From NCBI GenBank assembly GCA_002269645.1, contig NIVC01000685.1, positions 31,190 to 95,189 on the forward strand: a stretch of 64,000 nt of DNA. Direction: 5' to 3'. Positions 14,399 through 48,458 of this stretch are shown here, piece after piece. The first letter of the stretch is position 1; every line of letters starts with the position of its first letter. The DNA is from Macrostomum lignano. Taxonomy: Eukaryota. The position numbers and the translations under genes were made by a program. The notes below the pieces were generated by a model. It saw only the letters and a list, made by a program, of their open reading frames with translations. It had not been told where the DNA came from and searched no databases.

Positions 14399-17300
14399 AT
14401 GAATGCTGATATATCATCTTCGATTGGAATTAAACATCAGACAACAAAGACTGAAGGTCAGGCAACAAAGGCTGACGACCAGACAACAAAAACTGAAGGT
14501 CAGACAACAAAAACTAAAGGTCAGACAACAAAAACTGAAGGTCAGACAACAAAAACTGAAGGTCGGACAACAAAGGTTGACGATCAGACAACAAAGGCTG
14601 ACGACCAGACAACAAAGGCTGACGATCAGACAACAAAAACTGAAGGTCAGACAACAAAGGCTGACGATCAGACAACAAAGGCTGACGATCAGACAACAAA
14701 GGCTGACGATCAGACAATAAAAGCTGACGATCGGACAATAAAGGCTGACGACCAGACAAAAAAAACTGAAGGTCAGACAACAAAAACTGAAGATCAGACA
14801 ACAAGAACTGAAGGTCAGACAACAGAAACTGAAGGTCGGGGAACAAAAACTGAAGGTCAGACAACAAAGGCTGACGATCAGACAACAAAGGCTGACAATC
14901 AGACAATAAAAGCTGACGATCGGACAATAAAGGCTGACGACCAGACAAAAAAAACTGAAGGTCAGACAACAAAAACTGAAGATCAGACAACAAGAACTGA
15001 AGGTCAGACAACAGAAACTGAAGGTCGGACAACAAAGGTTGACGATCAGACAACAAAGGCTGACGACCAGACAACAAAGGCTGACGATCAGACAACAAAA
15101 ACTGAAGGTCAGACAACAAAGGCTGACGATCAGACAACAAAGGCTGACGATCAGACAACAAAGGCTGACGATCAGACAATAAAAGCTGACGATCGGACAA
15201 TAAAGGCTGACGACCAGACAAAAAAAACTGAAGGTCAGACAACAAAAACTGAAGATCAGACAACAAGAACTGAAGGTCAGACAACAGAAACTGAAGGTCG
15301 GGGAACAAAAACTGAAGGTCAGACAACAAAGGCTGACGATCAGACAACAAAGGCTGACGATCAGACAATAAAAGCTGACGATCGGACAATAAAGGCTGAC
15401 GACCAGACAAAAAAAACTGAAGGTCAGACAACAAAAACTGAAGATCAGACAACAAGAACTGAAGGTCAGACAACAGAAACTGAAGGTCGGGGAACAAAAA
15501 CTGAAGGTCAGACAACAAAGGCTGACGATCAGACAACAAAGGCTGACGACCAGACAACAGAGGCTGACGATCAGACAACAAAAACTGAAGGTCAGACAAC
15601 AAAGGCTGACGATCAGACAACAAAGGCTGACGACCAGACAACAGAGGCTGACGATCAGACAACAAAAACTGAAGGTCAGACAACAAAGGCTGACGATCAG
15701 ACAACAAAGGCTGACGATCAGACAACAAAGGCTGACGATCAGACAACAAAGGCTGACGATCAGACAACAAAAACTGAAGGTCAGACAACAAAGGCTGACG
15801 ATCAGACAACAAAGGCTGACGACAAGACAACAAAGGCTGACGATCAGACAACAAAGGCTGAAGGTCAGACAACAAAGGCTGACGATCAGACAACAAAGGC
15901 TGACGATCAGACAACAAAGGCTGACGATCAGACAATAAAAGCTGACGATCGGACAATAAAGGCTGATGACCAGACAACAAAAACTGAAGGTCAGACAACA
16001 AAAACTGAAGATCAGACAACAAAAACTGAAGGTCAGACAACAAAAACTGAAGGTCGGACAACAAAAACTGAAGGTCAGACAACAAAGGCTGACGACCAGA
16101 CAACAAAAACTGAAGGTCAGACAACAAAGGCTGACGATCAGACAACAAAAACTGAAGGTCAGACGACAAAGGCTGACGATCAGACAACAAAGGCTGACGA
16201 CCAGACAACAAAGGCTGAAGGTCAGACAACAAAAACTGAAGGTCAGACAACAAAAACTGAAGGTCAGACAACAAAAACTGAAGGTCAGACAACAAAAACT
16301 GAAGGTCAGACAACAAAAACTGAAGGTCAGACAACAAAGGCTGACGACCAGACAACAAAAACTGAAGGTCAGACAACAAAGGCTGACGATCAGACAACAA
16401 AAACTGAAGGTCAGACAACAAAGGCTGACGATCAGACAACAAAGGCTGACGACCAGACAACAAAGGCTGACGATCAGACAACAAAAACTGAAGGTCAGAC
16501 AACAGAGGCTGACGATCAGACAACAAAAACTGAAGGTCAGACAACAAAAACTGAAGGTCAGACAACAAAGGCTGACGATCAGACAACAAAGGCTGACGAT
16601 CAGACAACAAAAACTGAAGGTCAGACAACAGAGGCTGACGATCAGACAACAAAAACTGAAGTTCAGACAACAAAAACTGAAGGTCGGACAACAAAAACTG
16701 AAGGTCAGACAACAAAGGCTGAAGGTCAGACAACAAAAACTGAAGGTCAGACAACAAAAACTGAAGGTCAGACAACAAAAACTGAAGGTCAGACAACAAA
16801 AACTGAAGGTCAGACAACAAAAACTGACGATCAGGCAACAAAGGCTGACGATCAGACAACAAAGGCTGACGATCAGACAACAAAAACTGAAGGTCAGACA
16901 ACAGAGGCTGACGATCAGACAACAAAAACTGAAGTTCAGACAACAAAAACTGAAGGTCAGACAACAAAAACTGAAGGTCAGACAACAAAAACTGAAGGTC
17001 AGACAACAAAGGCTGACGATCAGGCAACAAAGGCTGACGATCAGACAACAAAGGCTGACGATCAGACAACAAAAACTGAAGGTCAGACAACAGAGGCTGA
17101 CGATCAGACAACAAAAACTGAAGTTCAGACAACAAAAACTGAAGGTCAGACAACAAAGGTTGACGATCAGACAACAAAGGCTGACGACAAGACAACAAAG
17201 GCTGACGATCAGACAACAAAAACTGAAGGTCAGACAACAAAGGCTGACGATCAGACAACAAAAACTGAAGGTCAGACAACAAAGGCTGACGATCAGACAA

Positions 17301-20300
17301 CAAAGGCTGACGATCAGACGACAAAGGCTGACGACCAGACAACAAAGGCTGACGACCAGACAACAAAGGCTGACGATCAGACAACAAAAACTGAAGGTCA
17401 GACAACAAAAACTGAAGGTCAGGCAACAAAAACTGAAGGTCAGACAACAAAGGCTGACGATCAGACAACAAAGGCTGACGACCAGACAACAAAGGCTGAC
17501 GATCAGACAACAAAAACTGAAGGTCAGACAACAGAGGCTGACGATCAGACAACAAAAACTGAAGGTCAGACAACAAAGGCTGACGATCAGACAACAAAGG
17601 CTGACGATCAGACAACAAAGGCTGACGGTCAGACAACAAAAACTGAAGGTCAGACAACAAAAACTGAAGGTCAGACAACAAAGGTTGACGATCAGACGAC
17701 AAAGGCTGACGACCAGACAACAAAGGCTGACGATCAGACAACAAAGGCTGACGATCAGACAACAAAGGCTGACGATCAGACAACAAAGGCTGACGATCAG
17801 ACAACAAAGGCTGACGATCAGACAAAAAAAACTGAAGGTCAGACAACAAAAACTGAAGATCAGACAACAAGAACTGAAGGTCAGACAACAGAAACTGAAG
17901 GTCGGACAACAAAGGTTGACGATCAGACAACAAAGGCTGACGACCAGACAACAAAGGCTGACGATCAGACAACAAAAACTGAAGGTCAGACAACAAAGGC
18001 TGACGATCAGACAACAAAGGCTGACGATCAGACAACAAAGGCTGACGATCAGACAATAAAAGCTGACGATCGACAATAAAGGCTGACGACCAGACAAAAA
18101 AAACTGAAGGTCAGACAACAAAAACTGAAGGTCAGACAACAAAGGTTGACGATCAGACGACAAAGGCTGACGATCAGACAACAAAGGCTGACGACCAGAC
18201 AACAAAGGCTGAAGGTCAGACAACAAAAACTGAAGGTCAGACAACAAAAACTGAAGGTCAGACAACAAAAACTGAAGGTCAGACAACAAAAACTGAAGGT
18301 CAGACAACAAAGGCTGACGACCAGACAACAAAAACTGAAGGTCAGACAACAAAGGCTGACGATCAGACAACAAAAACTGAAGGTCAGACAACAAAGGCTG
18401 ACGATCAGACAACAAAGGCTGACGACCAGACAACAAAGGCTGACGATCAGACAACAAAAACTGAAGGTCAGACAACAGAGGCTGACGATCAGACAACAAA
18501 AACTGAAGGTCGACAACAAAAACTGAAGGTCAGACAACAAAGGCTGAAGGTCAGACAACAAAAACTGAAGGTCAGACAACAAAAACTGAAGGTCAGACAA
18601 CAAAAACTGAAGGTCAGACAACAAAGGCTGACGATCAGACAACAAAGGCTGACGATCAGACAACAAAGGCTGACGATCAGACAACAAAGGCTGACGATCA
18701 GACAACAAAGGCTGACGATCAGACAACAAAAACTGAAGGTCAGACAACAAAAACTGAAGGTCAGACAACAAAGGCTGACGATCAGGCAACAAAGGCTGAC
18801 GATCAGACAACAAAGGCTGACGATCAGACAACAAAAACTGAAGGTCAGACAACAGAGGCTGACGATAAGACAACAAAAACTGAAGTTCAGACAACAAAAA
18901 CTGAAGGTCAGACAACAAAGGTTGACGATCAGACAACAAAGGCTGACGATCAGACAAAAAAAACTGAAGGTCAGACAACAAAAACTGAAGATCAGACAAC
19001 AAGAACTGAAGGTCAGACAACAGAAACTGAAGGTCGGACAACAAAGGTTGACGATCAGACAACAAAGGCTGACGACCAGACAACAAAGGCTGACGATCAG
19101 ACAACAAAAACTGAAGGTCAGACAACAAAGGCTGACGATCAGACAACAAAGGCTGACGATCAGACAACAAAGGCTGACGATCAGACAATAAAAGCTGACG
19201 ATCGGACAATAAAGGCTGACGACCAGACAAAAAAAACTGAAGGTCAGACAACAAAAACTGAAGGTCAGACAACAAAGGTTGACGATCAGACGACAAAGGC
19301 TGACGATCAGACAACAAAGGCTGACGACCAGACAACAAAGGCTGAAGGTCAGACAACAAAAACTGAAGGTCAGACAACAAAAACTGAAGGTCAGACAACA
19401 AAAACTGAAGGTCAGACAACAAAAACTGAAGGTCAGACAACAAAAACTGAAGGTCAGACAACAAAGGCTGACGACCAGACAACAAAAACTGAAGGTCAGA
19501 CAACAAAGGCTGACGATCAGACAACAAAAACTGAAGGTCAGACAACAAAGGCTGACGATCAGACAACAAAGGCTGACGACCAGACAACAAAGGCTGACGA
19601 TCAGACAACAAAAACTGAAGGTCAGACAACAGAGGCTGACGATCAGACAACAAAAACTGAAGGTCGGACAACAAAAACTGAAGGTCAGACAACAAAGGCT
19701 GAAGGTCAGACAACAAAAACTGAAGGTCAGACAACAAAAACTGAAGGTCAGACAACAAAAACTGAAGGTCAGACAACAAAAACTGAAGGTCAGACAACAA
19801 AAACTGAAGGTCAGACAACAAAGGCTGACGATCAGACAACAAAGGCTGACGATCAGACAACAAAGGCTGACGATCAGACAACAAAGGCTGACGATCAGAC
19901 AACAAAAACTGAAGATCAGACAACAAAAACTGAAGGTCAGACAACAAAGGCTGACGATCAGGCAACAAAGGCTGACGATCAGACAACAAAGGCTGACGAT
20001 CAGACAACAAAAACTGAAGGTCAGACAACAGAGGCTGACGATCAGACAACAAAAACTGAAGTTCAGACAACAAAAACTGAAGGTCAGACAACAAAGGTTG
20101 ACGATCAGACAACAAAGGCTGACGACAAGACAACAAAGGCTGACGATCAGACAACAAAAACTGAAGGTCAGACAACAAAGGCTGACGATCAGACAACAAA
20201 AACTGAAGGTCAGACAACAAAGGCTGACGATCAGACAACAAAGGCTGACGATCAGACGACAAAGGCTGACGACCAGACAACAAAGGCTGACGACCAGACA

Positions 20301-23300
20301 ACAAAGGCTGACGATCAGACAACAAAAACTGAAGGTCAGACAACAAAAACTGAAGGTCAGGCAACAAAAACTGAAGGTCAGACAACAAAGGCTGACGATC
20401 AGACAACAAAGGCTGACGACCAGACAACAAAGGCTGACGATCAGACAACAAAAACTGAAGGTCAGACAACAGAGGCTGACGATCAGACAACAAAAACTGA
20501 AGGTCAGACAACAAAGGCTGACGATCAGACAACAAAGGCTGACGATCAGACAACAAAAACTGAAGGTCAGACAACAGAGGCTGACGATCAGACAACAAAA
20601 ACTGAAGGTCGGACAACAAAAACTGAAGGTCAGACAACAAAGGCTGAAGGTCAGACAACAAAAACTGAAGGTCAGACAACAAAAACTGAAGGTCAGACAA
20701 CAAAAACTGAAGGTCAGACAACAAAAACTGAAGGTCAGACAACAAAAACTGAAGGTCAGACAACAAAGGCTGACGATCAGACAACAAAGGCTGACGATCA
20801 GACAACAAAGGCTGACGATCAGACAACAAAGGCTGACGATCAGACAACAAAAACTGAAGATCAGACAACAAAAACTGAAGGTCAGACAACAAAGGCTGAC
20901 GATCAGGCAACAAAGGCTGACGATCAGACAACAAAGGCTGACGATCAGACAACAAAAACTGAAGGTCAGACAACAGAGGCTGACGATCAGACAACAAAAA
21001 CTGAAGTTCAGACAACAAAAACTGAAGGTCAGACGACAAAGGCTGACGACCAGACAACAAAGGCTGACGACCAGACAACAAAGGCTGACGATCAGACAAC
21101 AAAAACTGAAGGTCAGACAACAAAAACTGAAGGTCAGGCAACAAAAACTGAAGGTCAGACAACAAAGGCTGACGATCAGACAACAAAGGCTGACGACCAG
21201 ACAACAAAGGCTGACGATCAGACAACAAAAACTGAAGGTCAGACAACAGAGGCTGACGATCAGACAACAAAAACTGAAGGTCAGACAACAAAGGCTGACG
21301 ATCAGACAACAAAGGCTGACGGTCAGACAACAAAAACTGAAGGTCAGACAACAAAAACTGAAGGTCAGACAACAAAGGTTGACGATCAGACAACAAAGGC
21401 TGACGACCAGACAACAAAGGCTGACGATCAGACAACAAAAACTGAAGGTCAGACAACAAAGGCTGACGATCAGACAACAAAGGCTGACGATCAGACAACA
21501 AAGGCTGACGATCAGACAAAAAAGCTGACGATCAGACAATAAAGGCTGACGACCAGACAACAAAAACTGAAGGTCAGACAACAGAGGCTGACGATCAGAC
21601 AACAAAAACTGAAGTTCAGACAACAAAAACTGAAGGTCAGACTACAAAGGTTGACGATCAGACAACAAAGGCTGACGACAAGACAACAAAGGCTGACGAT
21701 CAGACAACAAAAACTGAAGGTCAGACAACAAAGGCTGACGATCAGACAACAAAAACTGAAGGTCAGACAACAAAGGCTGACGATCAGACAACAAAGGCTG
21801 ACGATCAGACGACAAAGGCTGACGACCAGACAACAAAGGCTGACGACCAGACAACAAAGGCTGACGATCAGACAACAAAAACTGAAGGTCAGACAACAAA
21901 AACTGAAGGTCAGGCAACAAAAACTGAAGGTCAGACAACAAAGGCTGACGATCAGACAACAAAGGCTGACGACCAGACAACAAAGGCTGACGATCAGACA
22001 ACAAAAACTGAAGGTCAGACAACAGAGGCTGACGATCAGACAACAAAAACTGAAGGTCAGACAACAAAGGCTGACGATCAGACAACAAAGGCTGACGATC
22101 AGACAACAAAGGCTGACGATCAGACAACAAAGGCTGACGGTCAGACAACAAAAACTGAAGGTCAGACAACAAAAACTGAAGGTCAGACAACAAAGGCTGA
22201 CGACCAGACAACAAAAACTGAAGGTCAGACAACAAAGGCTGACGATCAGACAACAAAAACTGAAGGTCAGACAACAAAGGCTGACGATCAGACAACAAAG
22301 GCTGACGACCAGACAACAAAGGCTGACGATCAGACAACAAAAACTGAAGGTCAGACAACAGAGGCTGACGATCAGACAACAAAAACTGAAGGTCGGACAA
22401 CAAAAACTGAAGGTCAGACAACAAAGGCTGAAGGTCAGACAACAAAAACTGAAGGTCAGACAACAAAAACTGAAGGTCAGACAACAAAAACTGAAGGTCA
22501 GACAACAAAAACTGAAGGTCAGACAACAAAAACTGAAGGTCAGACAACAAAGGCTGACGATCAGACAACAAAGGCTGACGATCAGACAACAAAGGCTGAC
22601 GATCAGACAACAAAGGCTGACGATCAGACAACAAAAACTGAAGGTCAGACAACAAAAACTGAAGGTCAGACAACAAAGGCTGACGATCAGGCAACAAAGG
22701 CTGACGATCAGACAACAAAGGCTGACGATCAGACAACAAAAACTGAAGATCAGACAACAAGAACTGAAGGTCAGACAACAGAAACTGAAGGTCGGACAAC
22801 AAAGGTTGACGATCAGACAACAAAGGCTGACGACCAGACAACAAAGGCTGACGATCAGACAACAAAAACTGAAGGTCAGACAACAAAGGCTGACGATCAG
22901 ACAACAAAGGCTGACGATCAGACAACAAAGGCTGACGATCAGACAATAAAAGCTGACGATCGGACAATAAAGGCTGACGACCAGACAAAAAAACTGAAGG
23001 TCAGACAACAAAAACTGAAGGTCAGACAACAAAGGTTGACGATCAGACGACAAAGGCTGACGATCAGACAACAAAGGCTGACGACCAGACAACAAAGGCT
23101 GAAGGTCAGACAACAAAAACTGAAGGTCAGACAACAAAAACTGAAGGTCAGACAACAAAAACTGAAGGTCAGACAACAAAAACTGAAGGTCAGACAACAA
23201 AGGCTGACGACCAGACAACAAAAACTGAAGGTCAGACAACAAAGGCTGACGATCAGACAACAAAAACTGAAGGTCAGACAACAAAGGCTGACGATCAGAC

Positions 23301-26300
23301 AACAAAGGCTGACGACCAGACAACAAAGGCTGACGATCAGACAACAAAAACTGAAGGTCAGACAACAAGGCTGACGATCAGACAACAAAAACTGAAGGTC
23401 AGACAACAAAAACTGAAGGTCAGACAACAAAGGCTGAAGGTCAGACAACAAAAACTGAAGGTCAGACAACAAAAACTGAAGGTCAGACAACAAAAACTGA
23501 AGGTCAGACAACAAAGGCTGACGATCAGACAACAAAGGCTGACGATCAGACAACAAAGGCTGACGATCAGACAACAAAGGCTGACGATCAGACAACAAAG
23601 GCTGACGATCAGACAACAAAAACTGAAGTTCAGACAACAAAAACTGAAGGTCAGACAACAAAGGTTGACGATCAGACAACAAAGGCTGACGACAGACAAC
23701 AAAGGCTGACGATCAGACAACAAAAACTGAAGGTCAGACAACAAAGGCTGACGATCAGACAACAAAAACTGAAGGTCAGACAACAAAGGCTGACGATCAG
23801 ACAACAAAGGCTGACGATCAGACAACAAAGGCTGACGACAGACAACAAAGGCTGACGACCAGACAACAAAGGCTGACGATCAGACAACAAAAACTGAAGG
23901 TCAGACAACAAAAACTGAAGGTCAACAAAAACTGAAGGTCAGACAACAAAGGCTGACGATCAGACAACAAAGGCTGACGACCAGACAACAAAGGCTGACG
24001 ATCAGACAACAAAAACTGAAGGTCAGACAACAAGGCTGACGATCAGACAACAAAAACTGAAGGTCAGACAACAAAGGCTGACGATCAGACAACAAAGGCT
24101 GACGTCAGACAACAAAAACTGAAGGTCAGACAACAAAAACTGAAGGTCAGACAACAAAGGTTGACGATCAGACAACAAAGGCTGACGACCAGACAACAAA
24201 GGCTGACGATCAGACAACAAAAACTGAAGGTCAGACAACAAAGGCTGACGATCAGACAACAAAGGCTGACGATCAGACAACAAAGGCTGACGATCAGACA
24301 AAAAAGCTGACGATCAGACAACAAAAAGGCTGACGACCAGACAACAAAAACTGAAGGTCAGACAACAAGGCTGACGATCAGACAACAAAAACTGAAGTCA
24401 GACAACAAAAACTGAAGGTCAGACAACAAAGGCTGACGATCAGACAACAAAGGCTGACGACAGACAACAAAGGCTGACGATCAGACAACAAAAACTGAAG
24501 GTCAGACAACAAAGGCTGACGATCAGACAACAAAAACTGAAGGTCAGACAACAAAGGCTGACGATCAGACAACAAAGGCTGACGATCAGACAACAAAGGC
24601 TGACGATCAGACAACAAAGGCTGACGATCAGACAACAAAGGCTGACGATCAGACAACAAAAACTGAAGGTCAGACAACAAAAACTGAAGGTCAGACAACA
24701 AAAACTGAAGGTCAGACAACAAAGGCTGACGATCAGACAACAAAGGCTGACGACCAGACAACAAAGGCTGACGATCAGACAACAAAAACTGAAGGTCAGA
24801 CAACAAGGCTGACGATCAGACAACAAAAACTGAAGGTCAGACAACAAAGGCTGACGATCAGACAACAAAGGCTGACGATCAGACAACAAAGGCTGACGAT
24901 CAGACAACAAAGGCTGACGTCAGACAACAAAAACTGAAGGTCAGACAACAAAAACTGAAGGTCAGACAACAAAGGCTGACGATCAGACAACAAAAACTGA
25001 AGGTCAGACAACAAAGGCTGACGATCAGACAACAAAAACTGAAGGTCAGACAACAAAGGCTGACGATCAGACAACAAAGGCTGACGACAGACAACAAAGG
25101 CTGACGATCAGACAACAAAAACTGAAGGTCAGACAACAAGGCTGACGATCAGACAACAAAAACTGAAGGTCAGACAACAAAAACTGAAGGTCAGACAACA
25201 AAGGCTGAGGTCAGACAACAAAAACTGAAGTCAGACAACAAAAACTGAAGGTCAGACAACAAAAACTGAAGGTCAGACAACAAAAACTGAAGGTCAGACA
25301 ACAAAAACTGAAGGTCAGACAACAAAGGCTGACGATCAGACAACAAAGGCTGACGATCAGACAACAAAGGCTGACGATCAGACAACAAAGGCTGACGATC
25401 AGACAACAAAAACTGAAGGTCAGACAACAAAAACTGAAGGTCAGACAACAAAGGCTGACGATCAGACAACAAAGGCTGACGATCAGACAACAAAGGCTGA
25501 CGATCAGACAACAAAAACTGAAGGTCAGACAACAAAACTGAAGGTCAGACAACAAAACTGAAGGTCAGACAACAAAGGTGACGATCAGACAACAAAGGCT
25601 GACGACCAGACAACAAAGGCTGACGATCAGACAACAAAAACTGAAGGTCAGACAACAAAGGCTGACGATCAGACAACAAAGGCTGACGATCAGACAACAA
25701 AGGCTGACGATCAGACAAAAAAGCTGACGATCAGACAAAAAGGCTGACGACCAGACAAAAAAACTGAAGGTCAGACAACAAAAACTGAAGGTCAGACAAC
25801 AAAGGTTGACGATCAGACAACAAAGGCTGACGATCAGACAACAAAGGCTGACGACCAGACAACAAAGGCTGAAGGTCAGACAACAAAAACTGAAGGTCAG
25901 ACAACAAAAACTGAAGGTCAGACAACAAAAACTGAAGGTCAGACAACAAAAACTGAAGGTCAGACAACAAAGGCTGACGACCAGACAACAAAAACTGAAG
26001 GTCAGACAACAAAGGCTGACGATCAGACAACAAAAACTGAAGGTCAGACAACAAAGGCTGACGATCAGACAACAAAGGCTGACGACCAGACAACAAAGGC
26101 TGACGATCAGACAACAAAAACTGAAGGTCAGACAACAAGGCTGACGATCAGACAACAAAAACTGAAGGTCGACAACAAAAACTGAAGGTCAGACAACAAA
26201 GGCTGAAGGTCAGACAACAAAAACTGAAGGTCAGACAACAAAAACTGAAGGTCAGACAACAAAAACTGAAGGTCAGACAACAAAGGCTGACGATCAGACA

Positions 26301-32300: not shown

Positions 32301-35300
32301 GTCAGACAACAAAAACTGAAGGTCAGACAACAAAGGTGACGATCAGACAACAAAGGCTGACGACAGACAACAAAGGCTGACGATCAGACAACAAAAACTG
32401 AAGGTCAGACAACAAAGGCTGACGATCAGACAACAAAAACTGAAGGTCAGACAACAAAGGCTGACGATCAGACAACAAAGGCTGACGATCAGACGACAAA
32501 GGCTGACGACCAGACAACAAAGGCTGACGACCAGACAACAAAGGCTGACGATCAGACAACAAAAACTGAAGGTCAGACAACAAAAACTGAAGGTCAGGCA
32601 ACAAAAACTGAAGGTCAGACAACAAAGGCTGACGATCAGACAACAAAGGCTGACGACCAGACAACAAAGGCTGACGATCAGACAACAAAAACTGAAGGTC
32701 AGACAACAAGGCTGACGATCAGACAACAAAAACTGAAGGTCAGACAACAAAGGCTGACGATCAGACAACAAAGGCTGACGTCAGACAACAAAAACTGAAG
32801 GTCAGACAACAAAAACTGAAGGTCAGACAACAAAGGTTGACGATCAGACAACAAAGGCTGACGACCAGACAACAAAGGCTGACGATCAGACAACAAAAAC
32901 TGAAGGTCAGACAACAAAGGCTGACGATCAGACAACAAAGGCTGACGGTCAGACAACAAAAACTGAAGGTCAGACAACAAAAACTGAAGGTCAGACAACA
33001 AAGGCTGACGATCAGACGACAAAGGCTGACGACCAGACAACAAAGGCTGACGACCAGACGACAAAGGCTGACGACCAGACAACAAAGGCTGACGATCAGA
33101 CAACAAAGGCTGACGATCAGACAACAAAGGCTGACGATCAGACAAAAAAAACTGAAGGTCAGACAACAAAAACTGAAGATCAGACAACAAGAACTGAAGG
33201 TCAGACAACAGAAACTGAAGGTCGGACAACAAAGGTTGACGATCAGACAACAAAGGCTGACGACCAGACAACAAAGGCTGACGATCAGACAACAAAAACT
33301 GAAGGTCAGACAACAAAGGCTGACGATCAGACAACAAAAACTGAAGGTCAGACAACAAAGGCTGACGATCAGACAACAAAAACTGAAGGTCAGACAACAA
33401 AGGCTGACGATCAGACAACAAAGGCTGACGACCAGACAACAAAGGCTGACGATCAGACAACAAAAACTGAAGGTCAGACAACAAGGCTGACGATCAGACA
33501 ACAAAAACTGAAGGTCGGACAACAAAAACTGAAGGTCAGACAACAAAGGCTGAAGGTCAGACAACAAAAACTGAAGGTCAGACAACAAAAACTGAAGGTC
33601 AGACAACAAAAACTGAAGGTCAGACAACAAAAACTGAAGGTCAGACAACAAAAACTGAAGGTCAGACAACAAAGGCTGACGATCAGACAACAAAGGCTGA
33701 CGATCAGACAACAAAAACTGAAGGTCAGACAACAAAAACTGAAGGTCAGGCAACAAAAACTGAAGGTCAGACAACAAAGGCTGACGATCAGACAACAAAG
33801 GCTGACGATCAGGTAACAAAGGCTGACGATCAGACAACAAAAACTGAAGGTCAGGCAACAAAAACTGAAGGTCAGACAACAAAGGCTGACGATCAGACAA
33901 CAAAGGCTGACGACCAGACAACAAAGGCTGACGATCAGACAACAAAAACTGAAGGTCAGACAACAGAGGCTGACGATCAGACAACAAAAACTGAAGGTCA
34001 GACAACAAAGGCTGACGATCAGACAACAAAGGCTGACGTCAGACAACAAAAACTGAAGGTCAGACAACAAAAACTGAAGGTCAGACAACAAAGGTGACGA
34101 TCAGACAACAAAGGCTGACGACCAGACAACAAAGGCTGACGATCAGACAACAAAAACTGAAGGTCAGACAACAAAGGCTGACGATCAGACAACAAAGGCT
34201 GACGATCAGACAACAAAGGCTGACGATCAGACAAAAAGCTGACGATCAGACAACAAAGGCTGACGACCAGACAACAAAAACTGAAGGTCAGACAACAGAG
34301 GCTGACGATCAGACAACAAAAACTGAAGTCAGACAACAAAAACTGAAGGTCAGACAACAAAGGTTGACGATCAGACAACAAAGGCTGACGACAGACAACA
34401 AAGGCTGACGATCAGACAACAAAAACTGAAGGTCAGACAACAAAGGCTGACGATCAGACAACAAAAACTGAAGGTCAGACAACAAAGGCTGACGATCAGA
34501 CAACAAAGGCTGACGATCAGACGACAAAGGCTGACGACCAGACAACAAAGGCTGACGACCAGACAACAAAGGCTGACGATCAGACAACAAAAACTGAAGG
34601 TCAGACAACAAAAACTGAAGGTCAGACAACAAAAACTGAAGGTCAGACAACAAAGGCTGACGATCAGACAACAAAGGCTGACGACAGACAACAAAGGCTG
34701 ACGATCAGACAACAAAAACTGAAGGTCAGACAACAAGGCTGACGATCAGACAACAAAAACTGAAGGTCAGACAACAAAGGCTGACGATCAGACAACAAAG
34801 GCTGACGGTCAGACAACAAAAACTGAAGGTCAGACAACAAAAACTGAAGGTCAGACAACAAAGGCTGACGATCAGACAACAAAGGCTGACGGTCAGACAA
34901 CAAAAACTGAAGGTCAGACAACAAAAACTGAAGGTCAGACAACAAAGGTTGACGATCAGACGACAAAGGCTGACGACCAGACAACAAAGGCTGACGATCA
35001 GACAACAAAGGCTGACGATCAGACAACAAAGGCTGACGATCAGACAACAAAGGCTGACGATCAGACAACAAAGGCTGACGATCAGACAAAAAAAACTGAA
35101 GGTCAGACAACAAAACTGAAGATCAGACAACAAAACTGAAGGTCAGACAACAGAAACTGAAGGTCGGACAACAAAGGTTGACGATCAGACAACAAAGGCT
35201 GACGACCAGACAACAAAGGCTGACGATCAGACAACAAAAACTGAAGGTCAGACAACAAAGGCTGACGATCAGACAACAAAGGCTGACGATCAGACAACAA

Positions 35301-38300
35301 AGGCTGACGATCAGACAATAAAAGCTGACGATCGGACAATAAAGGCTGACGACCAGACAAAAAAACTGAAGGTCAGACAACAAAAACTGAAGGTCAGACA
35401 ACAAAGGTGACGATCAGACGACAAAGGCTGACGATCAGACAACAAAGGCTGACGACCAGACAACAAAGGCTGAAGGTCAGACAACAAAAACTGAAGGTCA
35501 GACAACAAAAACTGAAGGTCAGACAACAAAAACTGAAGGTCAGACAACAAAAACTGAAGGTCAGACAACAAAAACTGAAGGTCAGACAACAAAGGCTGAC
35601 GACCAGACAACAAAAACTGAAGGTCAGACAACAAAGGCTGACGATCAGACAACAAAAACTGAAGGTCAGACAACAAAGGCTGACGATCAGACAACAAAGG
35701 CTGACGACCAGACAACAAAGGCTGACGATCAGACAACAAAAACTGAAGGTCAGACAACAGAGGCTGACGATCAGACAACAAAAACTGAAGGTCGGACAAC
35801 AAAAACTGAAGGTCAGACAACAAAGGCTGAAGGTCAGACAACAAAAACTGAAGGTCAGACAACAAAAACTGAAGGTCAGACAACAAAAACTGAAGGTCAG
35901 ACAACAAAAACTGAAGGTCAGACAACAAAAACTGAAGGTCAGACAACAAAGGCTGACGATCAGACAACAAAGGCTGACGATCAGACAACAAAGGCTGACG
36001 ATCAGACAACAAAGGCTGACGATCAGACAACAAAAACTGAAGGTCAGACAACAAAAACTGAAGGTCAGACAACAAAGGCTGACGATCAGGCAACAAAGGC
36101 TGACGATCAGACAACAAAGGCTGACGATCAGACAACAAAAACTGAAGGTCAGACAACAGAGGCTGACGATCAGACAACAAAAACTGAAGTTCAGACAACA
36201 AAAACTGAAGGTCAGACAACAAAGGTTGACGATCAGACAACAAAGGCTGACGACAAGACAACAAAGGCTGACGATCAGACAACAAAAACTGAAGGTCAGA
36301 CAACAAAGGCTGACGATCAGACAACAAAAACTGAAGGTCAGACAACAAAGGCTGACGATCAGACAACAAAGGCTGACGATCAGACGACAAAGGCTGACGA
36401 CCAGACAACAAAGGCTGACGACCAGACAACAAAGGCTGACGATCAGACAACAAAAACTGAAGGTCAGACAACAAAAACTGAAGGTCAGGCAACAAAAACT
36501 GAAGGTCAGACAACAAAGGCTGACGATCAGGCAACAAAGGCTGACGATCAGACAACAAAGGCTGACGATCAGACAACAAAAACTGAAGGTCAGACAACAG
36601 AGGCTGACGATCAGACAACAAAAACTGAAGGTCAGGCAACAAAAACTGAAGGTCAGACAACAAAGGCTGACGATCAGACAACAAAGGCTGACGACCAGAC
36701 AACAAAGGCTGACGATCAGACAACAAAAACTGAAGGTCAGACAACAGAGGCTGACGATCAGACAACAAAAACTGAAGGTCAGACAACAAAGGCTGACGAT
36801 CAGACAACAAAGGCTGACGGTCAGACAACAAAAACTGAAGGTCAGACAACAAAAACTGAAGGTCAGACAACAAAGGCTGACGATCAGACAACAAAGGCTG
36901 ACGGTCAGACAACAAAAACTGAAGGTCAGACAACAAAAACTGAAGGTCAGACAACAAAGGTTGACGATCAGACAACAAAGGCTGACGATCAGACAACAAA
37001 GGCTGACGATCAGACAACAAAGGCTGACGATCAGACAACAAAGGCTGACGATCAGACAAAAAAAACTGAAGGTCAGACAACAAAAACTGAAGATCAGACA
37101 ACAAGAACTGAAGGTCAGACAACAGAAACTGAAGGTCGGACAACAAAGGTTGACGATCAGACAACAAAGGCTGACGACCAGACAACAAAGGCTGACGATC
37201 AGACAACAAAAACTGAAGGTCAGACAACAAAGGCTGACGATCAGACAACAAAGGCTGACGATCAGACAACAAAGGCTGACGATCAGACAATAAAAGCTGA
37301 CGATCGGACAATAAAGGCTGACGACCAGACAAAAAAAACTGAAGGTCAGACAACAAAAACTGAAGGTCAGACAACAAAGGTTGACGATCAGACGACAAAG
37401 GCTGACGATCAGACAACAAAGGCTGACGACCAGACAACAAAGGCTGAAGGTCAGACAACAAAAACTGAAGGTCAGACAACAAAAACTGAAGGTCAGCCAA
37501 CAAAAACTAAGGTCAGACAACAAAAACTGAAGGTCAGACAACAAAAACTGAAGGTCAGACAACAAAGGCTGACGACCAGACAACAAAAACTGAAGGTCAG
37601 ACAACAAAGGCTGACGATCAGACAACAAAAACTGAAGGTCAGACAACAAAGGCTGACGATCAGACAACAAAGGCTGACGACCAGACAACAAAGGCTGACG
37701 ATCAGACAACAAAAACTGAAGGTCAGACAACAGAGGCTGACGATCAGACAACAAAAACTGAAGGTCGGACAACAAAAACTGAAGGTCAGACAACAAAGGC
37801 TGAAGGTCAGACAACAAAAACTGAAGGTCAGACAACAAAAACTGAAGGTCAGACAACAAAAACTGAAGGTCAGACAACAAAAACTGAAGGTCAGACAACA
37901 AAAACTGAAGGTCAGACAACAAAGGCTGACGATCAGACAACAAAGGCTGACGATCAGACAACAAAGGCTGACGATCAGACAACAAAGGCTGACGATCAGA
38001 CAACAAAAACTGAAGGTCAGACAACAAAAACTGAAGGTCAGACAACAAAGGCTGACGATCAGGCAACAAAGGCTGACGATCAGACAACAAAGGCTGACGA
38101 TCAGACAACAAAAACTGAAGGTCAGACAACAGAGGCTGACGATCAGACAACAAAAACTGAAGTTCAGACAACAAAAACTGAAGGTCAGACAACAAAGGTT
38201 GACGATCAGACAACAAAGGCTGACGACAAGACAACAAAGGCTGACGATCAGACAACAAAAACTGAAGGTCAGACAACAAAGGCTGACGATCAGACAACAA

Positions 38301-41300
38301 AAACTGAAGGTCAGACAACAAAGGCTGACGATCAGACAACAAAGGCTGACGATCAGACGACAAAGGCTGACGACCAGACAACAAAGGCTGACGACCAGAC
38401 AACAAAGGCTGACGATCAGACAACAAAAACTGAAGGTCAGACAACAAAGGCTGACGATCAGACAACAAAGGCTGACGATCAGACAACAAAGGCTGACGAT
38501 CAGACAATAAAAGCTGACGATCGGACAATAAAGGCTGACGACCAGACAAAAAAAACTGAAGGTCAGACAACAAAAACTGAAGGTCAGACAACAAAGGTTG
38601 ACGATCAGACGACAAAGGCTGACGATCAGACAACAAAGGCTGACGACCAGACAACAAAGGCTGAAGGTCAGACAACAAAAACTGAAGGTCAGACAACAAA
38701 AACTGAAGGTCAGCCAACAAAAACTTAAGGTCAGACAACAAAAACTGAAGGTCAGACAACAAAAACTGAAGGTCAGACAACAAAGGCTGACGACCAGACA
38801 ACAAAAACTGAAGGTCAGACAACAAAGGCTGACGATCAGACAACAAAAACTGAAGGTCAGACAACAAAGGCTGACGATCAGACAACAAAGGCTGACGACC
38901 AGACAACAAAGGCTGACGATCAGACAACAAAAACTGAAGGTCAGACAACAGAGGCTGACGATCAGACAACAAAAACTGAAGGTCGGACAACAAAAACTGA
39001 AGGTCAGACAACAAAGGCTGAAGGTCAGACAACAAAAACTGAAGGTCAGACAACAAAAACTGAAGGTCAGACAACAAAAACTGAAGGTCAGACAACAAAA
39101 ACTGAAGGTCAGACAACAAAAACTGAAGGTCAGACAACAAAGGCTGACGATCAGACAACAAAGGCTGACGATCAGACAACAAAGGCTGACGATCAGACAA
39201 CAAAGGCTGACGATCAGACAACAAAAACTGAAGGTCAGACAACAAAAACTGAAGGTCAGACAACAAAGGCTGACGATCAGGCAACAAAGGCTGACGATCA
39301 GACAACAAAGGCTGACGATCAGACAACAAAAACTGAAGGTCAGACAACAGAGGCTGACGATCAGACAACAAAAACTGAAGTTCAGACAACAAAAACTGAA
39401 GGTCAGACAACAAAGGTTGACGATCAGACAACAAAGGCTGACGACAAGACAACAAAGGCTGACGATCAGACAACAAAAACTGAAGGTCAGACAACAAAGG
39501 CTGACGATCAGACAACAAAAACTGAAGGTCAGACAACAAAGGCTGACGATCAGACAACAAAGGCTGACGATCAGACGACAAAGGCTGACGACCAGACAAC
39601 AAAGGCTGACGACCAGAAAACAAAGGCTGACGATCAGACAACAAAAACTGAAGGTCAGACAACAAAAACTGAAGGTCAGGCAACAAAAACTGAAGGTCAG
39701 ACAACAAAGGCTGACGATCAGACAACAAAGGCTGACGACCAGACAACAAAGGCTGACGATCAGACAACAAAAACTGAAGGTCAGACAACAGAGGCTGACG
39801 ATCAGACAACAAAAACTGAAGGTCAGACAACAAAGGCTGACGATCAGACAACAAAGGCTGACGGTCAGACAACAAAAACTGAAGGTCAGACAACAAAAAC
39901 TGAAGGTCAGACAACAAAGGTTGACGATCAGACGACAAAGGCTGACGACCAGACAACAAAGGCTGACGATCAGACAACAAAAACTGAAGGTCAGACAACA
40001 AAGGCTGACGATCAGACAACAAAGGCTGACGATCAGACAACAAAGGCTGACGATCAGACAATAAAAGCTGACGATCGGACAATAAAGGCTGACGACCAGA
40101 CAACAAAAACTGAAGGTCAGACAACAGAGGCTGACGATCAGACAACAAAAACTGAAGTTCAGACAACAAAAACTGAAGGTCAGACAACAAAGGTTGACGA
40201 TCAGACAACAAAGGCTGACGACAAGACAACAAAGGCTGACGATCAGACAACAAAAACTGAAGGTCAGACAACAAAGGCTGACGATCAGACAACAAAAACT
40301 GAAGGTCAGACAACAAAGGCTGACGATCAGACAACAAAGGCTGACGATCAGACGACAAAGGCTGACGACCAGACAACAAAGGCGGACGACCAGACAACAA
40401 AGGCTGACGATCAGACAACAAAAACTGAAGGTCAGACAACAAAAACTGAAGGTCAGACAACAAAGGCTGACGATCAGACAACAAAGGCTGAAGGTCAGAC
40501 AACAAAGGCTGACGATCAGACAACAAAGGCTGACGATCAGACAACAAAGGCTGACGATCAGACAATAAAAGCTGACGATCGGACAATAAAGGCTGATGAC
40601 CAGACAACAAAAACTGAAGGTCAGACAACAAAAACTAAAGATCAGACAACAAGAACTGAAGGTCAGACAACAAAAACTGAAGGTCGGACAACAAAAACTG
40701 AAGGTCAGACAACAAAGGCTGACGACCAGAAAACAAAAACTGAAGGTCAGACAACAAAAACTGAAGGTCAGACAACAAAAACTGAAGGTCAGACAACAAA
40801 GGCTGACGATCAGACAACAAAGGCTGACGATCAGACAACAAAGGCTGACGATCAGACAGACAACAAAGGCTGACGATCAGACAACAAAAACTGAAGGTCA
40901 GACAACAAAAACTGAAGGTAAGACAACAAAGGTTGACGATCAGACAACAAAGGCTGACGACAAGACAACAAAGGCTGACGATCAGACAACAAAAACTGAA
41001 GGTCCGACAACAAAGGCTGACGATCAGACAACAAAAACTGAAGGTCAGACAACAAGGGCTGACGATCAGACAACAAAGGCTGACGATCAGACGACAAAGG
41101 CTGACGACCAGACAACAAAGGCTGACGACCAGACAACAAAGGCTGACGATCAGACAACAAAAACTGAAGGTCAGACAACAAAAACTGAAGGTCAGGCAAC
41201 AAAAACTGAAGGTCAGACAACAAAGGCTGACGATCAGACAACAAAGGCTGACGACCAGACAACAAAGGATGACGATCAGACAACAAAAACTGAAGATCAG

Positions 41301-42487
41301 ACAACAAGAACTGAAGGTCAGACAACAAAAACTGAAGGTCAGACAACAAAAACTGAAGGTCAGACAACAAAAACTGAAGGTCAGACAACAAAGGCTGACG
41401 ATCAAACAACAAAGGCTGACGATCAGACAACAAAGGCTGAAGGTTATATTCAGCAAACAAAGACCGTTTTGAGTAGTTTTTTAGGTCCTACGTGGCGCTC
41501 TGATTATTTTAAGTTGCCGTGGCAGAAATCAACAAACGATGGAGGTCAGCAGGGTCTGCAACCAGTTTCTGAAGATTCGAAAACTACTAATCTAAGTGGT
41601 AGGCACCAATCATCTAAATGGTTTAGTAATTTTTTAACTGATTTCAGTTGGTACAAAGACACAACTGAGTCGCTGATGCAGAAAGCGAACAAATTCAAAC
41701 TGGAAAAGAACTGGAGCGAAGCCGGAGACGCATTCTCCCAAGCTGCAGAAAACTTTTCGTCATCAAGGTGGCAACACAATTTACGAGCAGGCAGATTGCT
41801 ATCAAAATGCTGCCAACTGTTTTTGCAAAACTGACAAATCAAACGCCGTTCAGTGCTTGGAGCGAGCAGCTCAACTTTACTGCAAAGTCGGCCAGTTCAG
41901 CATTGCGGCCAGACTGATGGAGACAGCCGGTGAGCTGACTGAGGAATGGGCAAGGAAACTTCCCGCTTCGAATACTCAGAACAGTTCCGATCCTGAGCTC
42001 TGTGGCTTTCAGAACATAGACAATACGTATTTAATGCAAGCACTACCAGAAGGCAGCAGACTAATTCAGTGCTGAGAACAGTGTAGCCAGTGCCGCAAGC
42101 TGTAGAACCAAACTGGCCATTTTGCTTGGCGATTCGGGCCAATTTCGTGATGCTGCCAACGAATTCGCAAAGCTGGGTAAAAAGGCTCAAGGCCACGATC
42201 TGCTTCAGTTCGGAGCCAATGATCACATGCTCAAATCGTGCCTGTGCCTTGCAATGAATCCCAAAGCCTGCTCAAAACAAGCCGAGGAACTGGCAGCCAA
42301 GAGCGAGTCATTCGCTAGAAGTGACGAGTTCGCTCTGGTCAAAGGTCTTGCCGCAGCCAACAGTGTCGATGCTTTCGACGAGGCGGTGACCGAGTACGAG
42401 AGATTCAACAATTTGGACGAGTTCGACATGCACCGGATAGCAGATGCTCGTAAAATCTTACAGAGCTCGACAGTTGAGCTTGTTTAG
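14399..42487 (+). pseudogene. Alpha-SNAP-like gene, subfamily A copy A1, containing a 27-kb coding minisatellite; disrupted
   Basis: The ATG at 14399 (MNADISSSIGIKHQTT, homologous to the A3 start) leads into the repeat frame. The repeat frame runs into ANKFKLEKNWSEAGDAF (alpha-SNAP ANMFKMAKNWSAAGNAF), GQFSIAAR and LLQFGANDH...STVELV*. Compared with A2/A3 there is a +1 nt insertion at ~41755, an 11-nt deletion at 42040/42041 and TAC>TAA at 42062-42064. AATAAA lies at 42561. Confidence 0.8.
14438..41444 (+). repeat. 27.0-kb 21-bp minisatellite (~1,286 units) with two main variants, cagacaacaaaggctgacgat (QTTKADD) and cagacaacaaaaactgaaggt (QTTKTEG)
   Basis: Directly visible. 27,007 bp / 21 gives ~1,286 units. 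Minor variants mark higher-order blocks. Confidence 0.98.
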
Positions 42488-47787: not shown

Positions 47788-48458
47788 AAAAAATGCCATC
47801 ATTTATTGATCGAGTTCAGATGCTGTGTCGATTGTGTCGATTGGACGTATGGTTCGCCAACTGGTTGCTGCAAACATTGAAACCGTATTTATTTACAATA
47901 TTCACATTATTCACCATACTACTGTTAGTAGTAGATTTACTAAAGGACGTAATGAAAGCAGTAGTAATAGCAACAGTAGAAGCAGCAAGATTTTCCTCCA
48001 TTAGTTTAGTAATAGAAGTAGTAGTATTGGGAGGACTGATATGGGCCGCTTTTCAACATTTACGCGGAAGAACGCCTTCATTAGAAGGGCAAGGCGGCGA
48101 ACGTTCAAACATAAATCTTATCTCGCGCGATTCTAGCCATGAAGACATCAGCAGGACACCTGAAGGCCCGGTGCGTAATTTTAATCCTTTAAATTGGAAC
48201 TTCTCTGCTCTTCTCTTCTCTGCAATTGTTAGTACAGTTTGGATAGGTCAGATGAGTCAGCAAACAGTGAGGGAAGATCCGAAAGCCACTGAACCGAGTC
48301 AATGTGGTAAACATCAATCATCAAGTTCATGGTCGAGTAATATTTTAACTGGTTGGACATGGTTCAAAGATGCAGCCGTGGCTAAACTTACTGCTGAGTC
48401 GGTTAAGAAGACAGTATCTTCAGTCCTTAGTACGGTTACTGAACACCGTCCTGACGAT

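What the first reader, a model, noticed from the sequence alone, without database searches (positions are those of the whole stretch)
14438..41444. 27-kb coding-frame minisatellite inside an alpha-SNAP-like gene (potential ~9,300-aa protein)
Seen: ~1,286 21-bp units. The first 3.6 kb are in frame with the ATG at 14399, and the last units run in frame into the SNAP domain. The heptads QTTKADD/QTTKTEG are Thr-rich and polar with no hydrophobic a/d positions, so not a coiled coil. Inference: this is either a giant disordered spacer in a formerly functional protein or a runaway expansion after pseudogenisation. The SNAP-domain lesions and a GAA>TAA at 38726-38728 favour the latter.
Basis: partly seen in the sequence, partly recalled or inferred. 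Interest (0 to 1): 0.72.

Follow-up and report, generated by a model that had tools for sequence, protein, structure and literature searches.

The report
Giant 21-bp repeat in dead SNAP-like gene
A short seven-amino-acid coding repeat found in a flatworm (Macrostomum) family of SNAP-like genes has grown about 100-fold into a 27-kb tandem array in one broken family member, and most of the array's apparent frameshifts are assembly errors rather than mutations.

Summary
Window 14438-41444 is one 21-bp tandem array of about 1,290 units encoding QTTKADD/QTTKTEG. It opens in frame with ATG 14399 and its last 28 units read into an alpha-SNAP-type domain (PF14938).

The window is Macrostomum DNA and carries eight intronless SNAP-like paralogs in tandem. 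Relatives show the repeat's origin: about 1 heptad in par5, 12 in par3, and 7 in an intact 560-aa ORF in M. lignano Mlig_3_7. The giant array is therefore an expansion of a small coding linker repeat.

The host gene is dead in unique sequence: +1 bp at 41754-41757, an 11-bp deletion at 42040|42041 and TAC>TAA at 42062-42064. The well-resolved array ends add TAA 38726-38728 and a 4-bp duplication at 40853-40856. Unit variants look neutral, and 4 of 6 frames of the unit lack stops, so long ORFs are automatic.

The 83 one-base deletions in the core (21.5-35.4 kb) are consensus artefacts. They sit where paralogous blocks carry minor variant bases (54 of 78, against a 2% background). The core's length and order are unreliable, and those frameshifts say nothing about decay.

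Verdict: an expanded coding-derived minisatellite in a pseudogene. Modest interest.

The parts
14196..14398 (+). 5' flank of gene A, homologous to the 5' flank of paralog par5 (54717-54910). The position of par5's ATG is TCG in gene A.
   Evidence: blastn gives 69% over 166 bp, E=2e-10. The pairwise alignment is A2.
14399..14437 (+). ATG plus 12 codons (MNADISSSIGIKH). This is homologous to the par5 N-terminus (..AADPAVGIEDQTT) and has no hydrophobic segment.
14438..41444 (+). 21-bp tandem array of about 1,290 units encoding QTTKADD/QTTKTEG in one register.
   Evidence: TRF, DP segmentation and block-duplication structure with exact repeats up to 940 bp.
14438..21500 (+). Left well-resolved zone of the array. 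It has high unit diversity and two 1-bp deletions (18072, 18512).
21500..35450 (+). Array core. It holds 80 of the 83 one-bp deletions and 2-4 times fewer minor variants than the ends. It is a 'washed-out' consensus, so its length and order are unreliable.
35450..41444 (+). Right well-resolved zone. It contains three near-identical blocks of about 0.9 kb (35536-36475, 37509-38448, 38727-39617).
38726..38728 (+). In-register TAA (GAA>TAA). It is the only substitution stop in the array. The sister block has a 1-bp deletion at the same base (37509).
40853..40856 (+). 4-bp duplication (CAGA) that shifts the frame. Only the 28 units downstream are in register with the SNAP domain.
41445..41672 (+). 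Unique linker (YIQQTKTVLSS...RHQSSKWFSNF...YKDTTES), 94.1% identical to the linker of the intact M. lignano ORF X.
41673..42487 (+). Broken alpha-SNAP-type domain spread over three frames. The lesions are +1 bp in the T-run 41754-41757, an 11-bp deletion at 42040|42041 and TAC>TAA at 42062-42064. The original stop is TAG 42485-42487.
   Evidence: Translation in three frames, PF14938 E=4e-43 for the stitched translation, alignment A1 to par3 and par5 and coordinates.
42561..42566 (+). AATAAA, 74 bp after the stop. It is a possible poly(A) signal.
   Evidence: Sequence reading only. Function was not tested.
47793..49972 (+). Paralog par3. It has two hydrophobic N-terminal segments, 12 copies of the same 21-bp unit (48451-48702), 6 copies of a 51-bp coding repeat (48683-49000) and a SNAP domain with a 1-bp deletion at 49393|49394.
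54911..55960 (+). Paralog par5. It has a gene-A-type short N-terminus with about one degenerate heptad (EDQTTGQ) and a SNAP domain with an 11-bp deletion, a 9-bp insertion and a 2-bp deletion.

Best explanation
**What it is.** Gene A (14399-42487) is a dead member of a Macrostomum-specific tandem cluster of intronless alpha-SNAP-like genes. In this subfamily a short in-frame 21-bp repeat lies between the N-terminus and the SNAP domain. Relatives carry about 1 to 12 heptads of Q-T-T-K-A/T-D/E-D/G. In gene A the repeat has expanded roughly 100-fold into a minisatellite of about 1,290 units (27 kb as assembled).

**How it grew (inferred).** Growth was by unequal exchange or replication-based duplication of multi-unit blocks of 0.46 to 3 kb. 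This follows from the mosaic of long exact internal repeats.

**Why it looks coding.** The array now most likely evolves as non-coding satellite-like DNA. Its ORF-like look is a by-product of the unit, because 4 of 6 frames lack stops, and of the recency of amplification. It is not a product of selection.

**The frameshifts.** The 83 single-base deletions in the array core are not mutations. They are consensus errors made where long reads from different, nearly identical blocks were piled together. The length and internal order of the middle 14 kb are therefore uncertain.
For: **Organism and family.**
- An intact paralog hits M. lignano SNAP-domain proteins at 87-89% identity.
- Window 43035-63985 is colinear with Mlig_3_7 contig NIVC01000090.1 at 91-97%.
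- Eight + strand SNAP-domain ORFs or remnants lie in the window.

**Origin of the repeat.**
- The same 21-bp unit occurs in frame 12 times in par3.
- It occurs 7.3 times in the intact 560-aa ORF X at L001:5435-7117. X has a gene-A-type linker (94.1% identical) and a full PF14938 domain, E=1.6e-47.
- The gene A start region is homologous to that of par5.

**Gene death.**
- The SNAP domain has +1 bp, -11 bp and TAC>TAA relative to par3, par5 and X.
- The well-resolved array ends carry TAA 38726 and a 4-bp duplication at 40853.

**No sign of constraint on the array.**
- The 25 distinct substitution variants split 5 synonymous, 18 non-synonymous and 2 that depend on the unit type, one of these being the GAA>TAA stop.
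- Single substitutions of the two consensus units would give 13-15 synonymous, 45-48 non-synonymous and 2-3 stops. There is no third-position excess.

**Block amplification.**
- Exact repeats reach 940 bp, at offsets of 462, 945, 1218, 1973, 2938 and 16128 bp.
- Only 64 unit types occur among 1,290 units.

**Deletions are artefacts.**
- 83 of the 87 indel events are 1-bp deletions, and 80 of the 83 lie in the core at 21.5-35.4 kb.
- Indel density is highest in the bins with the fewest substitution variants.
- Every recurrent frameshift unit type restores to two or more common intact variants.
- In a colinear 3-kb pair, all 20 core gaps face a minor-variant base, and in all 14 mismatches the core has the majority base.
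- Array-wide, 54 of 78 gaps face a minor-variant base against a 2.0% background.
- The direction of mismatches is 44:6, and gap bases are 66:5.
- The published Macrostomum assemblies I found are PacBio CLR/Canu assemblies polished with Pilon (PMC5730564, PMC10468722).
Against: - No reads, RNA or peptide data were available, so neither the true array length nor the absence of expression is shown.
- If the 83 deletions are restored, ATG 14399, the array end and the SNAP N-terminus fall in one phase. A very long ORF, up to TAA 38726, may then exist in the real genome.
- The +1 lesion in the SNAP domain lies in a T-run and could itself be an assembly error.
- The whole subfamily, intact X included, shows high non-synonymous to synonymous ratios. 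Lineage-specific changes therefore do not single out gene A as unconstrained.
- The orthologous position in Mlig_3_7 could not be fetched, so there is no independent confirmation of the array.
Confidence: 0.75

Rival explanations
1. The single-base deletions are real mutations. On this view the array is an old, decaying pseudogene tract, and frameshifted units were spread by later block duplication.
For: - Many deletions recur in identical contexts of 100 to 160 bp on each side at two or three places.
- Only 20 frameshift unit types account for 83 units.
- Each type has a strict neighbour context.
Against: - The deletions fall at the sites where paralogous blocks differ by substitution: 54 of 78 against a 2% background.
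- The core always carries the majority base or a gap where the clean copy has a minor variant: 44:6 and 66:5.
- Gaps outnumber mismatches between near-identical blocks.
- 83 of 87 events are exactly 1-bp deletions.
- I know of no mutational process that deletes bases preferentially at paralog-variant sites. A mixed-read consensus does.
Confidence: 0.08
2. The array is translated. Gene A would encode a giant (8,000 aa or more) Thr/Lys/Asp/Glu-rich disordered protein that has discarded its SNAP domain, either as a newly born repeat protein or as a very long spacer.
For: - ATG 14399 is homologous in position and frame to the par5 N-terminus.
- With the artefactual deletions restored, the QTTK frame could run from 14399 to TAA 38726.
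- The unit length is a multiple of 3, and relatives use the repeat as coding sequence.
Against: - Openness is automatic, because 4 of 6 frames of the unit lack stops and both strands show ORFs over 1,000 aa.
- Variants show no excess of synonymous changes.
- Three other indels (-4, +2, -2) lie in the core, and a +4 lies in the clean zone.
- The ancestral ATG position is TCG in gene A.
- No database protein carries the repeat.
- There is no signal peptide or anchor.
Confidence: 0.06
3. The array length is largely an assembly product. Only the two anchored ends (about 7 kb and 6 kb) would be real, and the 14-kb core would be a mis-layout of unanchored reads, either over-expanded or collapsed.
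For: - The core is a washed-out consensus of blocks that also exist in the ends.
- Macrostomum assemblies are CLR/Canu based, with 15% tandem and simple repeats in M. lignano.
Against: - A mixed consensus implies that several true blocks were merged, which points to collapse rather than over-expansion. This is inference.
- Even the two clean ends alone give at least 13 kb, about 620 units.
- This rival concerns length only. It does not change what the array is.
Confidence: 0.3

Closest known systems
Coding minisatellites (VNTRs) in Ser/Thr-rich linker or mucin-type regions, for example the MUC1 60-bp VNTR. This comparison is from general knowledge and was not tested here.
   Same: - Head-to-tail repeats whose unit length is a multiple of 3, read in frame.
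- A Thr-rich, polar and presumably disordered product.
- Copy number that differs between gene copies (about 1, 7, 12 and 1,290 here).
- A block or higher-order structure consistent with unequal exchange.
   Different: - About 1,290 copies (27 kb) is one to two orders of magnitude beyond typical coding VNTRs.
- The host is a cytosolic-type SNAP-like gene without a signal peptide.
- The host gene is broken, so the array is probably no longer coding.
Satellite or macrosatellite DNA born from genes or pseudogenes. This comparison is from general knowledge and was not tested here.
   Same: A gene-derived sequence amplified into a long, homogeneous tandem array that keeps ORF-like features without evident selection.
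   Different: - The unit is a 21-bp intragenic repeat, not a whole gene or exon.
- The array still sits inside its recognisable parent gene, with both gene ends preserved.
Alpha-SNAP / Sec17 (PF14938)
   Same: - The C-terminal 270 aa of gene A, once stitched, match PF14938 at E=4e-43.
- Its intact relatives match at E=1e-46 to 1e-50.
- Alpha-SNAP and Sec17 are the closest solved structures, at E=1e-24 and 3e-18.
   Different: - This is a lineage-specific, tandemly expanded, intronless family with long N-terminal extensions.
- Most members carry one or two hydrophobic, TM-like segments, whereas canonical SNAPs are soluble.
- In gene A the domain is interrupted by two frameshifts and a stop.

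Membership tests
Minisatellite / tandem array | Head-to-tail copies of a 10-100 bp unit, many copies, far beyond chance | tested here: met
   TRF gives period 21, 1289.9 copies and score 34916. DP segmentation gives 1,290 units.
Coding (in-frame) repeat | Unit length a multiple of 3 and read in frame in an intact gene | tested here: met
   This holds for the relatives. ORF X has 7 heptads inside an intact 560-aa ORF, and par3 has 12 heptads inside its 557-aa ORF.
Functional protein-coding gene (gene A itself) | Uninterrupted ORF from start codon through the conserved domain | tested here: not met
   - The SNAP domain lies on three frames and carries a TAA.
- The array carries TAA 38726 and a 4-bp duplication at 40853 in its well-resolved zone.
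Alpha-SNAP / Sec17 family (PF14938) | Significant match to the SNAP domain profile over most of its length | tested here: met
   The stitched translation matches at E=4e-43 over profile positions 40-272 of 282. The closest PDB chains are alpha-SNAP and Sec17 (run on relative X).
Alpha-SNAP / Sec17 family (PF14938) | NSF and SNARE-complex binding and stimulation of the NSF ATPase | not testable with these tools
   This needs biochemistry. No residue-level analysis was done.
Coiled-coil heptad repeat | Hydrophobic residues at positions a and d of the heptad | tested here: not met
   The heptads are QTTKADD and QTTKTEG. The most hydrophobic 19-residue window in the first 200 aa scores -0.64 on the Kyte-Doolittle scale.
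Secreted mucin-type PTS domain | Signal peptide or an extracellular location for the Thr-rich repeat | tested here: not met
   - The gene A N-terminus has no hydrophobic segment.
- In X and par3 the repeat lies between the hydrophobic segments and the SNAP domain, which is cytosolic in the canonical proteins. That topology is inferred.
Long-read consensus artefact (for the 83 deletions) | Errors concentrated where reads from non-identical repeat copies are mixed, that is at paralog-variant sites, with loss of minor variants | tested here: met
   - 54 of 78 gaps face a minor-variant base, against a 2% background.
- The direction test gives 44:6 for mismatches and 66:5 for gap bases.
- All recurrent frameshift unit types sit at variant columns.
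- Raw reads were not available for direct proof.

The most novel reading that the evidence does not exclude
In the real genome the array may be one uninterrupted open frame of about 8,100 codons from ATG 14399 to TAA 38726. If it is transcribed and translated, it would give a giant Thr/Lys/Asp/Glu-rich disordered protein that arose from the linker repeat of a SNAP-like gene and has shed the SNAP domain. That would be a case of new-protein birth by runaway expansion of a coding minisatellite.
Probability: 0.06. Interest if true: 0.7.

Novelty: new member of a known kind. Interest (0 to 1): 0.3.

Why it matters
**Biology.** This is a clean, datable example of how a satellite-sized array can grow out of a small coding repeat. 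Both ends of the parent gene are preserved, and low-copy relatives with about 1, 7 and 12 units lie next to it.

**Method.** The locus shows a diagnostic for repeat assemblies. Single-base deletions that coincide with paralog-variant sites mark a mixed-read consensus. Without that test, 83 'frameshifts' would be read as pseudogene decay.

**Side finding.** The locus also exposes a tandemly expanded Macrostomum family of SNAP-like genes, most with hydrophobic N-terminal segments. I found no paper describing it.

None of this overturns current views, and tandem and simple repeats already make up 15% of the M. lignano genome (PMC5730564).

Tried and rejected
1. **Shared deletions as real mutations.** I first took the recurrence of deletions in identical contexts as proof of real frameshifts spread by duplication. 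I rejected this after the variant-site tests.
2. **Introns.** I considered short GT..AG stretches as an explanation for the SNAP frame changes. Par5 and X read straight through the same region, and the differences are a +1 and an 11-bp deletion.
3. **Variant genetic code (TAA = Tyr).** The TAA replaces a Tyr codon. I did not test this idea and set it aside on standard-code reasoning, because the paralogs have TAC or CAC at that position.
4. **Protein search with the repeat and linker ORF (40596-41831).** It returned only three weak low-complexity hits and no protein with the repeat.
5. **Search with the upstream 307-aa ORF.** This was meant to reach the orthologous array in Mlig_3_7. It found no homologs, and the exact-protein look-up for paralog 2 found nothing on record. 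The gene A orthologous position upstream of L001 could not be fetched.
6. **Lineage-specific dN/dS-type count on the SNAP domain.** It was uninformative, because all four sequences show high N:S ratios.
7. **Literature search.** A search for Macrostomum satellites and tandem repeats found nothing relevant.
8. **Homology of the gene A 5' flank to the par3/X N-terminal hydrophobic region.** There is none. The flank is homologous to par5 instead.
Full report
**1. The observation**

TRF reports one array at 14436-41440 with period 21, 1289.9 copies and 88% matches. A wrap-around dynamic-programming segmentation gives 1,290 units between 14438 and 41444.

Two units dominate. CAGACAACAAAAACTGAAGGT (QTTKTEG) occurs 422 times and CAGACAACAAAGGCTGACGAT (QTTKADD) 403 times. 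Only 64 distinct unit types exist.

ATG 14399 is in the QTTK register for 1,226 codons, up to a stop at 18077.

At the 3' end, ORF 40596-41834 runs from the array through a unique linker into a SNAP-type domain. Only the last 28 units (40857-41444) are in the QTTK register, because a 4-bp duplication (CAGA, 40853-40856) shifts the frame.

The TAA at 38726-38728 exists and is the only in-register substitution stop in the whole array.

**2. The setting**

The window is Macrostomum (free-living flatworm) DNA.
- An intact neighbouring ORF (44227-45303) hits M. lignano SNAP-domain proteins at 87-89% identity.
- Window 43035-63985 is colinear, at 91-97% DNA identity, with Mlig_3_7 contig NIVC01000090.1 (GCA_002269645.1), fetched as loci L001 and L002.
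- The exact window protein tested (ORF 44227-45303) is not on record. The window is therefore another copy (homeolog or haplotype), another assembly, or a very close species.

The array sits in the first of eight + strand, intronless, SNAP-domain (PF14938) genes or remnants:

| Gene | Coordinates |
|---|---|
| gene A | 14399-42487 |
| par2 | 44227-45303 |
| par3 | 47793-49972 |
| par4 | 51886-53187 |
| par5 | 54911 to about 55960 |
| par6 | 56678-57835 |
| par7 | 58956-59978 |
| par8 | 61208-62347 |

Alpha-SNAP and Sec17 are the nearest solved structures.

On a Kyte-Doolittle scan, par2, par4, par7 and par8 have one TM-like segment each, and par3 has two. Par5, par6 and gene A have none.

**3. 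Where the repeat comes from**

The same 21-bp unit occurs in frame in relatives.
- Par3 has 12 copies at 48451-48702, inside its 557-aa ORF.
- The M. lignano locus has 7.3 copies at L001:5901-6054.

The M. lignano copy lies in an intact 560-aa ORF (L001:5435-7117), which I call X. Its parts are, in order:
- two hydrophobic N-terminal segments;
- 7 heptads;
- a linker that is 94.1% identical to the gene A linker (YIQQTK..WQKSTND..GQQGLQPV..RHQSSKWFSNF);
- a complete SNAP domain at E=1.6e-47.

The gene A 5' flank and first 13 codons are homologous to the 5' flank and N-terminus of par5. Par5 has only about one degenerate heptad (EDQTTGQ). Par5's ATG aligns with TCG in gene A, and the gene A ATG lies three codons downstream in the same frame.

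The series is thus about 1, 7, 12 and 1,290 copies. The giant array is an expansion of a small coding linker repeat, not an unrelated satellite that landed in a gene.

**4. The host gene is dead**

Aligned with par3, par5 and X, the gene A SNAP domain carries three lesions:
- an extra T in the run 41754-41757;
- an 11-bp deletion at 42040|42041;
- TAC>TAA at 42062-42064, the Tyr/His position of the motif A-D-Y/H-F.

The 11-bp deletion and the nonsense change lie in unique sequence. They are not the kind of error that long-read consensus makes.

The gene A SNAP domain is also the most diverged of the four. It is 91.3-93.0% identical to the others, which are 94-95% identical to each other.

Par3 (1-bp deletion at 49393|49394) and par5 (11-bp deletion, 9-bp insertion, 2-bp deletion) are also broken. 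The other five paralogs are intact.

**5. The array shows no coding constraint**

- Four of the six frames of the unit lack stop codons (my reading of the unit). Consistent with this, both strands show ORFs of 1,000-1,700 aa.
- The 25 distinct substitution variants split 5 synonymous, 18 non-synonymous and 2 that depend on the unit type. One of those two is the GAA>TAA stop.
- All possible single changes would give 13-15 synonymous, 45-48 non-synonymous and 2-3 stops. Codon positions 1, 2 and 3 carry 8, 11 and 6 variants. This is the neutral expectation, though numbers are small.

**6. How it grew**

The array is a mosaic of long exact internal duplications.
- Exact repeats reach 940 bp, for example 35536-36475 = 37509-38448 and 37508-38399 = 38726-39617.
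- Preferred offsets are 462, 945, 1218, 1973 and 2938 bp.
- Long-range copies link the left and right parts at offsets of 16128 and 18102 bp.

This pattern, together with only 64 unit types, indicates recent amplification of multi-unit blocks. The mechanism, unequal sister-chromatid or homolog exchange or replication-based duplication, is inferred and not shown.

The TAA-bearing unit (CAGCCAACAAAAACTTAAGGT) lies in one 1.2-kb block. The sister block has the same rare CAGCC unit with a 1-bp deletion at the same base. This hints that a block carrying the stop was duplicated. It is weak evidence that growth continued after the frame was lost.

**7. The frameshifts inside the array are assembly artefacts**

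The DP finds 83 one-bp deletions, one 2-bp deletion, one 4-bp deletion, one 2-bp insertion and the 4-bp insertion. Eighty of the one-bp deletions lie between 21.5 and 35.4 kb. I first read their recurrence in identical contexts as real mutations spread by duplication. Five results reverse that reading.

- **(a) Gap excess.** Between near-identical blocks, pairs within the array ends differ by 0-3 mismatches and 0-1 gaps per 600 bp. Pairs that touch the core differ by 0-5 mismatches and 1-8 one-bp gaps. Gaps outnumbering substitutions is not an evolutionary pattern.
- **(b) Inverse relation to diversity.** Bins with the fewest minor variants have the most deletions.
- **(c) Variant columns.** Every recurrent frameshift unit type restores to two or more common intact variants. 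The deleted base therefore sits exactly where those variants differ:

| Frameshift unit | Restores to |
|---|---|
| CAAC-AAGG | AAAGG (403 copies) or AGAGG (35) |
| GACGA- | GAT (403) or GAC (90) |
| GAA-GT | GGT, GAT or GTT |
| AGG-TG | GCT or GTT |
| C-GAC | CAG or CGG |
| CAG-CAAC | ACA or GCA |

- **(d) A colinear pair.** In the 3-kb pair 25700-28700 (core) against 18020-21080, all 20 gaps in the core face a minor-variant base in the clean copy. In all 14 mismatches the core has the majority base and the clean copy the minor one.
- **(e) Array-wide counts.** Of the 80 core deletions, 78 have a gap opposite them in the best clean-zone match. In 54 of those 78 the facing base is a minor variant, and in 67 one lies within 4 nt. 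The background is 2.0%. Mismatch direction is 44:6 and gap bases are 66:5. Clean-versus-clean controls are balanced at 9:5 and 6:1.

A consensus built from noisy long reads that come from different, nearly identical blocks loses the minority base or drops the column. No mutational process I know of does this.

The published Macrostomum assemblies I found are PacBio CLR/Canu assemblies polished with Pilon or Arrow (PMC5730564, PMC10468722). Short reads cannot be placed in the most homogeneous part of such an array.

Two consequences follow.
- The core's frame breaks are not evidence of decay.
- The core's length and order are unreliable. Mixed piles suggest collapse rather than over-expansion, but that is inference.

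Restoring only the 83 deletions would put ATG 14399, the array end and the SNAP N-terminus in one phase, because the other four indels sum to zero. An ORF of about 8,100 codons up to TAA 38726 cannot be excluded in the real genome.

**8. Verdict**

The array is real, with at least 13 kb in the two well-resolved ends. It derives from a coding heptad repeat and has expanded about 100-fold inside a SNAP-like pseudogene.

The order of events is not established, and part of the apparent decay is technical.

It is a new member of a known kind, an expanded coding-derived minisatellite, in a genome already known to be 15% tandem and simple repeats. The residual novel possibility, a translated giant disordered protein, has low probability.

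Noticed in passing
window 44227-62347, and L001/L002: A tandem cluster of intronless SNAP-domain genes. Most have N-terminal extensions with one or two TM-like hydrophobic segments. Par8 also has a Ser/Thr-rich, mucin-like N-terminus with a weak MGC-24 hit. Canonical SNAPs are soluble, so membrane-anchored SNAP-like proteins look like a Macrostomum-specific expansion. Copy number differs between the window and Mlig_3_7: the window region 50046-57042, holding par4 and par5, has no colinear counterpart in L001.
   Followed up: partly
L001:5435-7117 (M. lignano NIVC01000090.1, reversed): An intact 560-aa ORF with two hydrophobic segments, 7 heptads, a linker and a full SNAP domain. It is not among the called genes of that locus, so it appears to be an unannotated gene.
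   Followed up: partly
window 48683-49000: A second coding repeat in par3: 51 bp, 6.2 copies, 96% matches, encoding QMSQQTVTEDPKTNAGG. It is absent from the M. lignano relative X.
   Followed up: no
window 45494-46152, and L001:2411-3143: A 19-bp intergenic array (AAGAGACAGGGGTGCCACC) with 33.8 copies in the window and 37.8 in Mlig_3_7. The array is conserved in position between the two copies.
   Followed up: no
window 51408-51764, and L001:699-803: A 16-bp array (ATAAACCCGAAATATC) with 22.3 copies in the window and 6.6 in the M. lignano locus. This is another length-variable tandem repeat in the cluster.
   Followed up: no
window 6198-6357 and 8538-8772: Two more short arrays upstream: a perfect 30-bp repeat of 5.3 copies and a 21-bp repeat of 11.2 copies whose unit is unrelated to the giant array.
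   Followed up: no
window 10730-13435, minus strand: A stretch with overlapping ORFs on both strands, in bins that are somewhat GC-richer than those just upstream. One ORF (10849-11745) has an RNase H domain (PF00075, E=1e-12). It looks like a decayed retroelement inserted about 1 kb upstream of gene A.
   Followed up: partly
window 62-2542 and 2810-3733: Two long + strand ORFs (826 and 307 aa) with no Pfam match. The 307-aa ORF has no homolog in the 5.8-billion-protein collection.
   Followed up: partly
window 18072, 18512 and 37509: Three isolated 1-bp deletions lie outside the core. Each also falls at a paralog-variant site (CAG/CGG twice, and the G/T site of the TAA unit). The same consensus problem therefore occurs sporadically in the otherwise clean ends.
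   Followed up: yes
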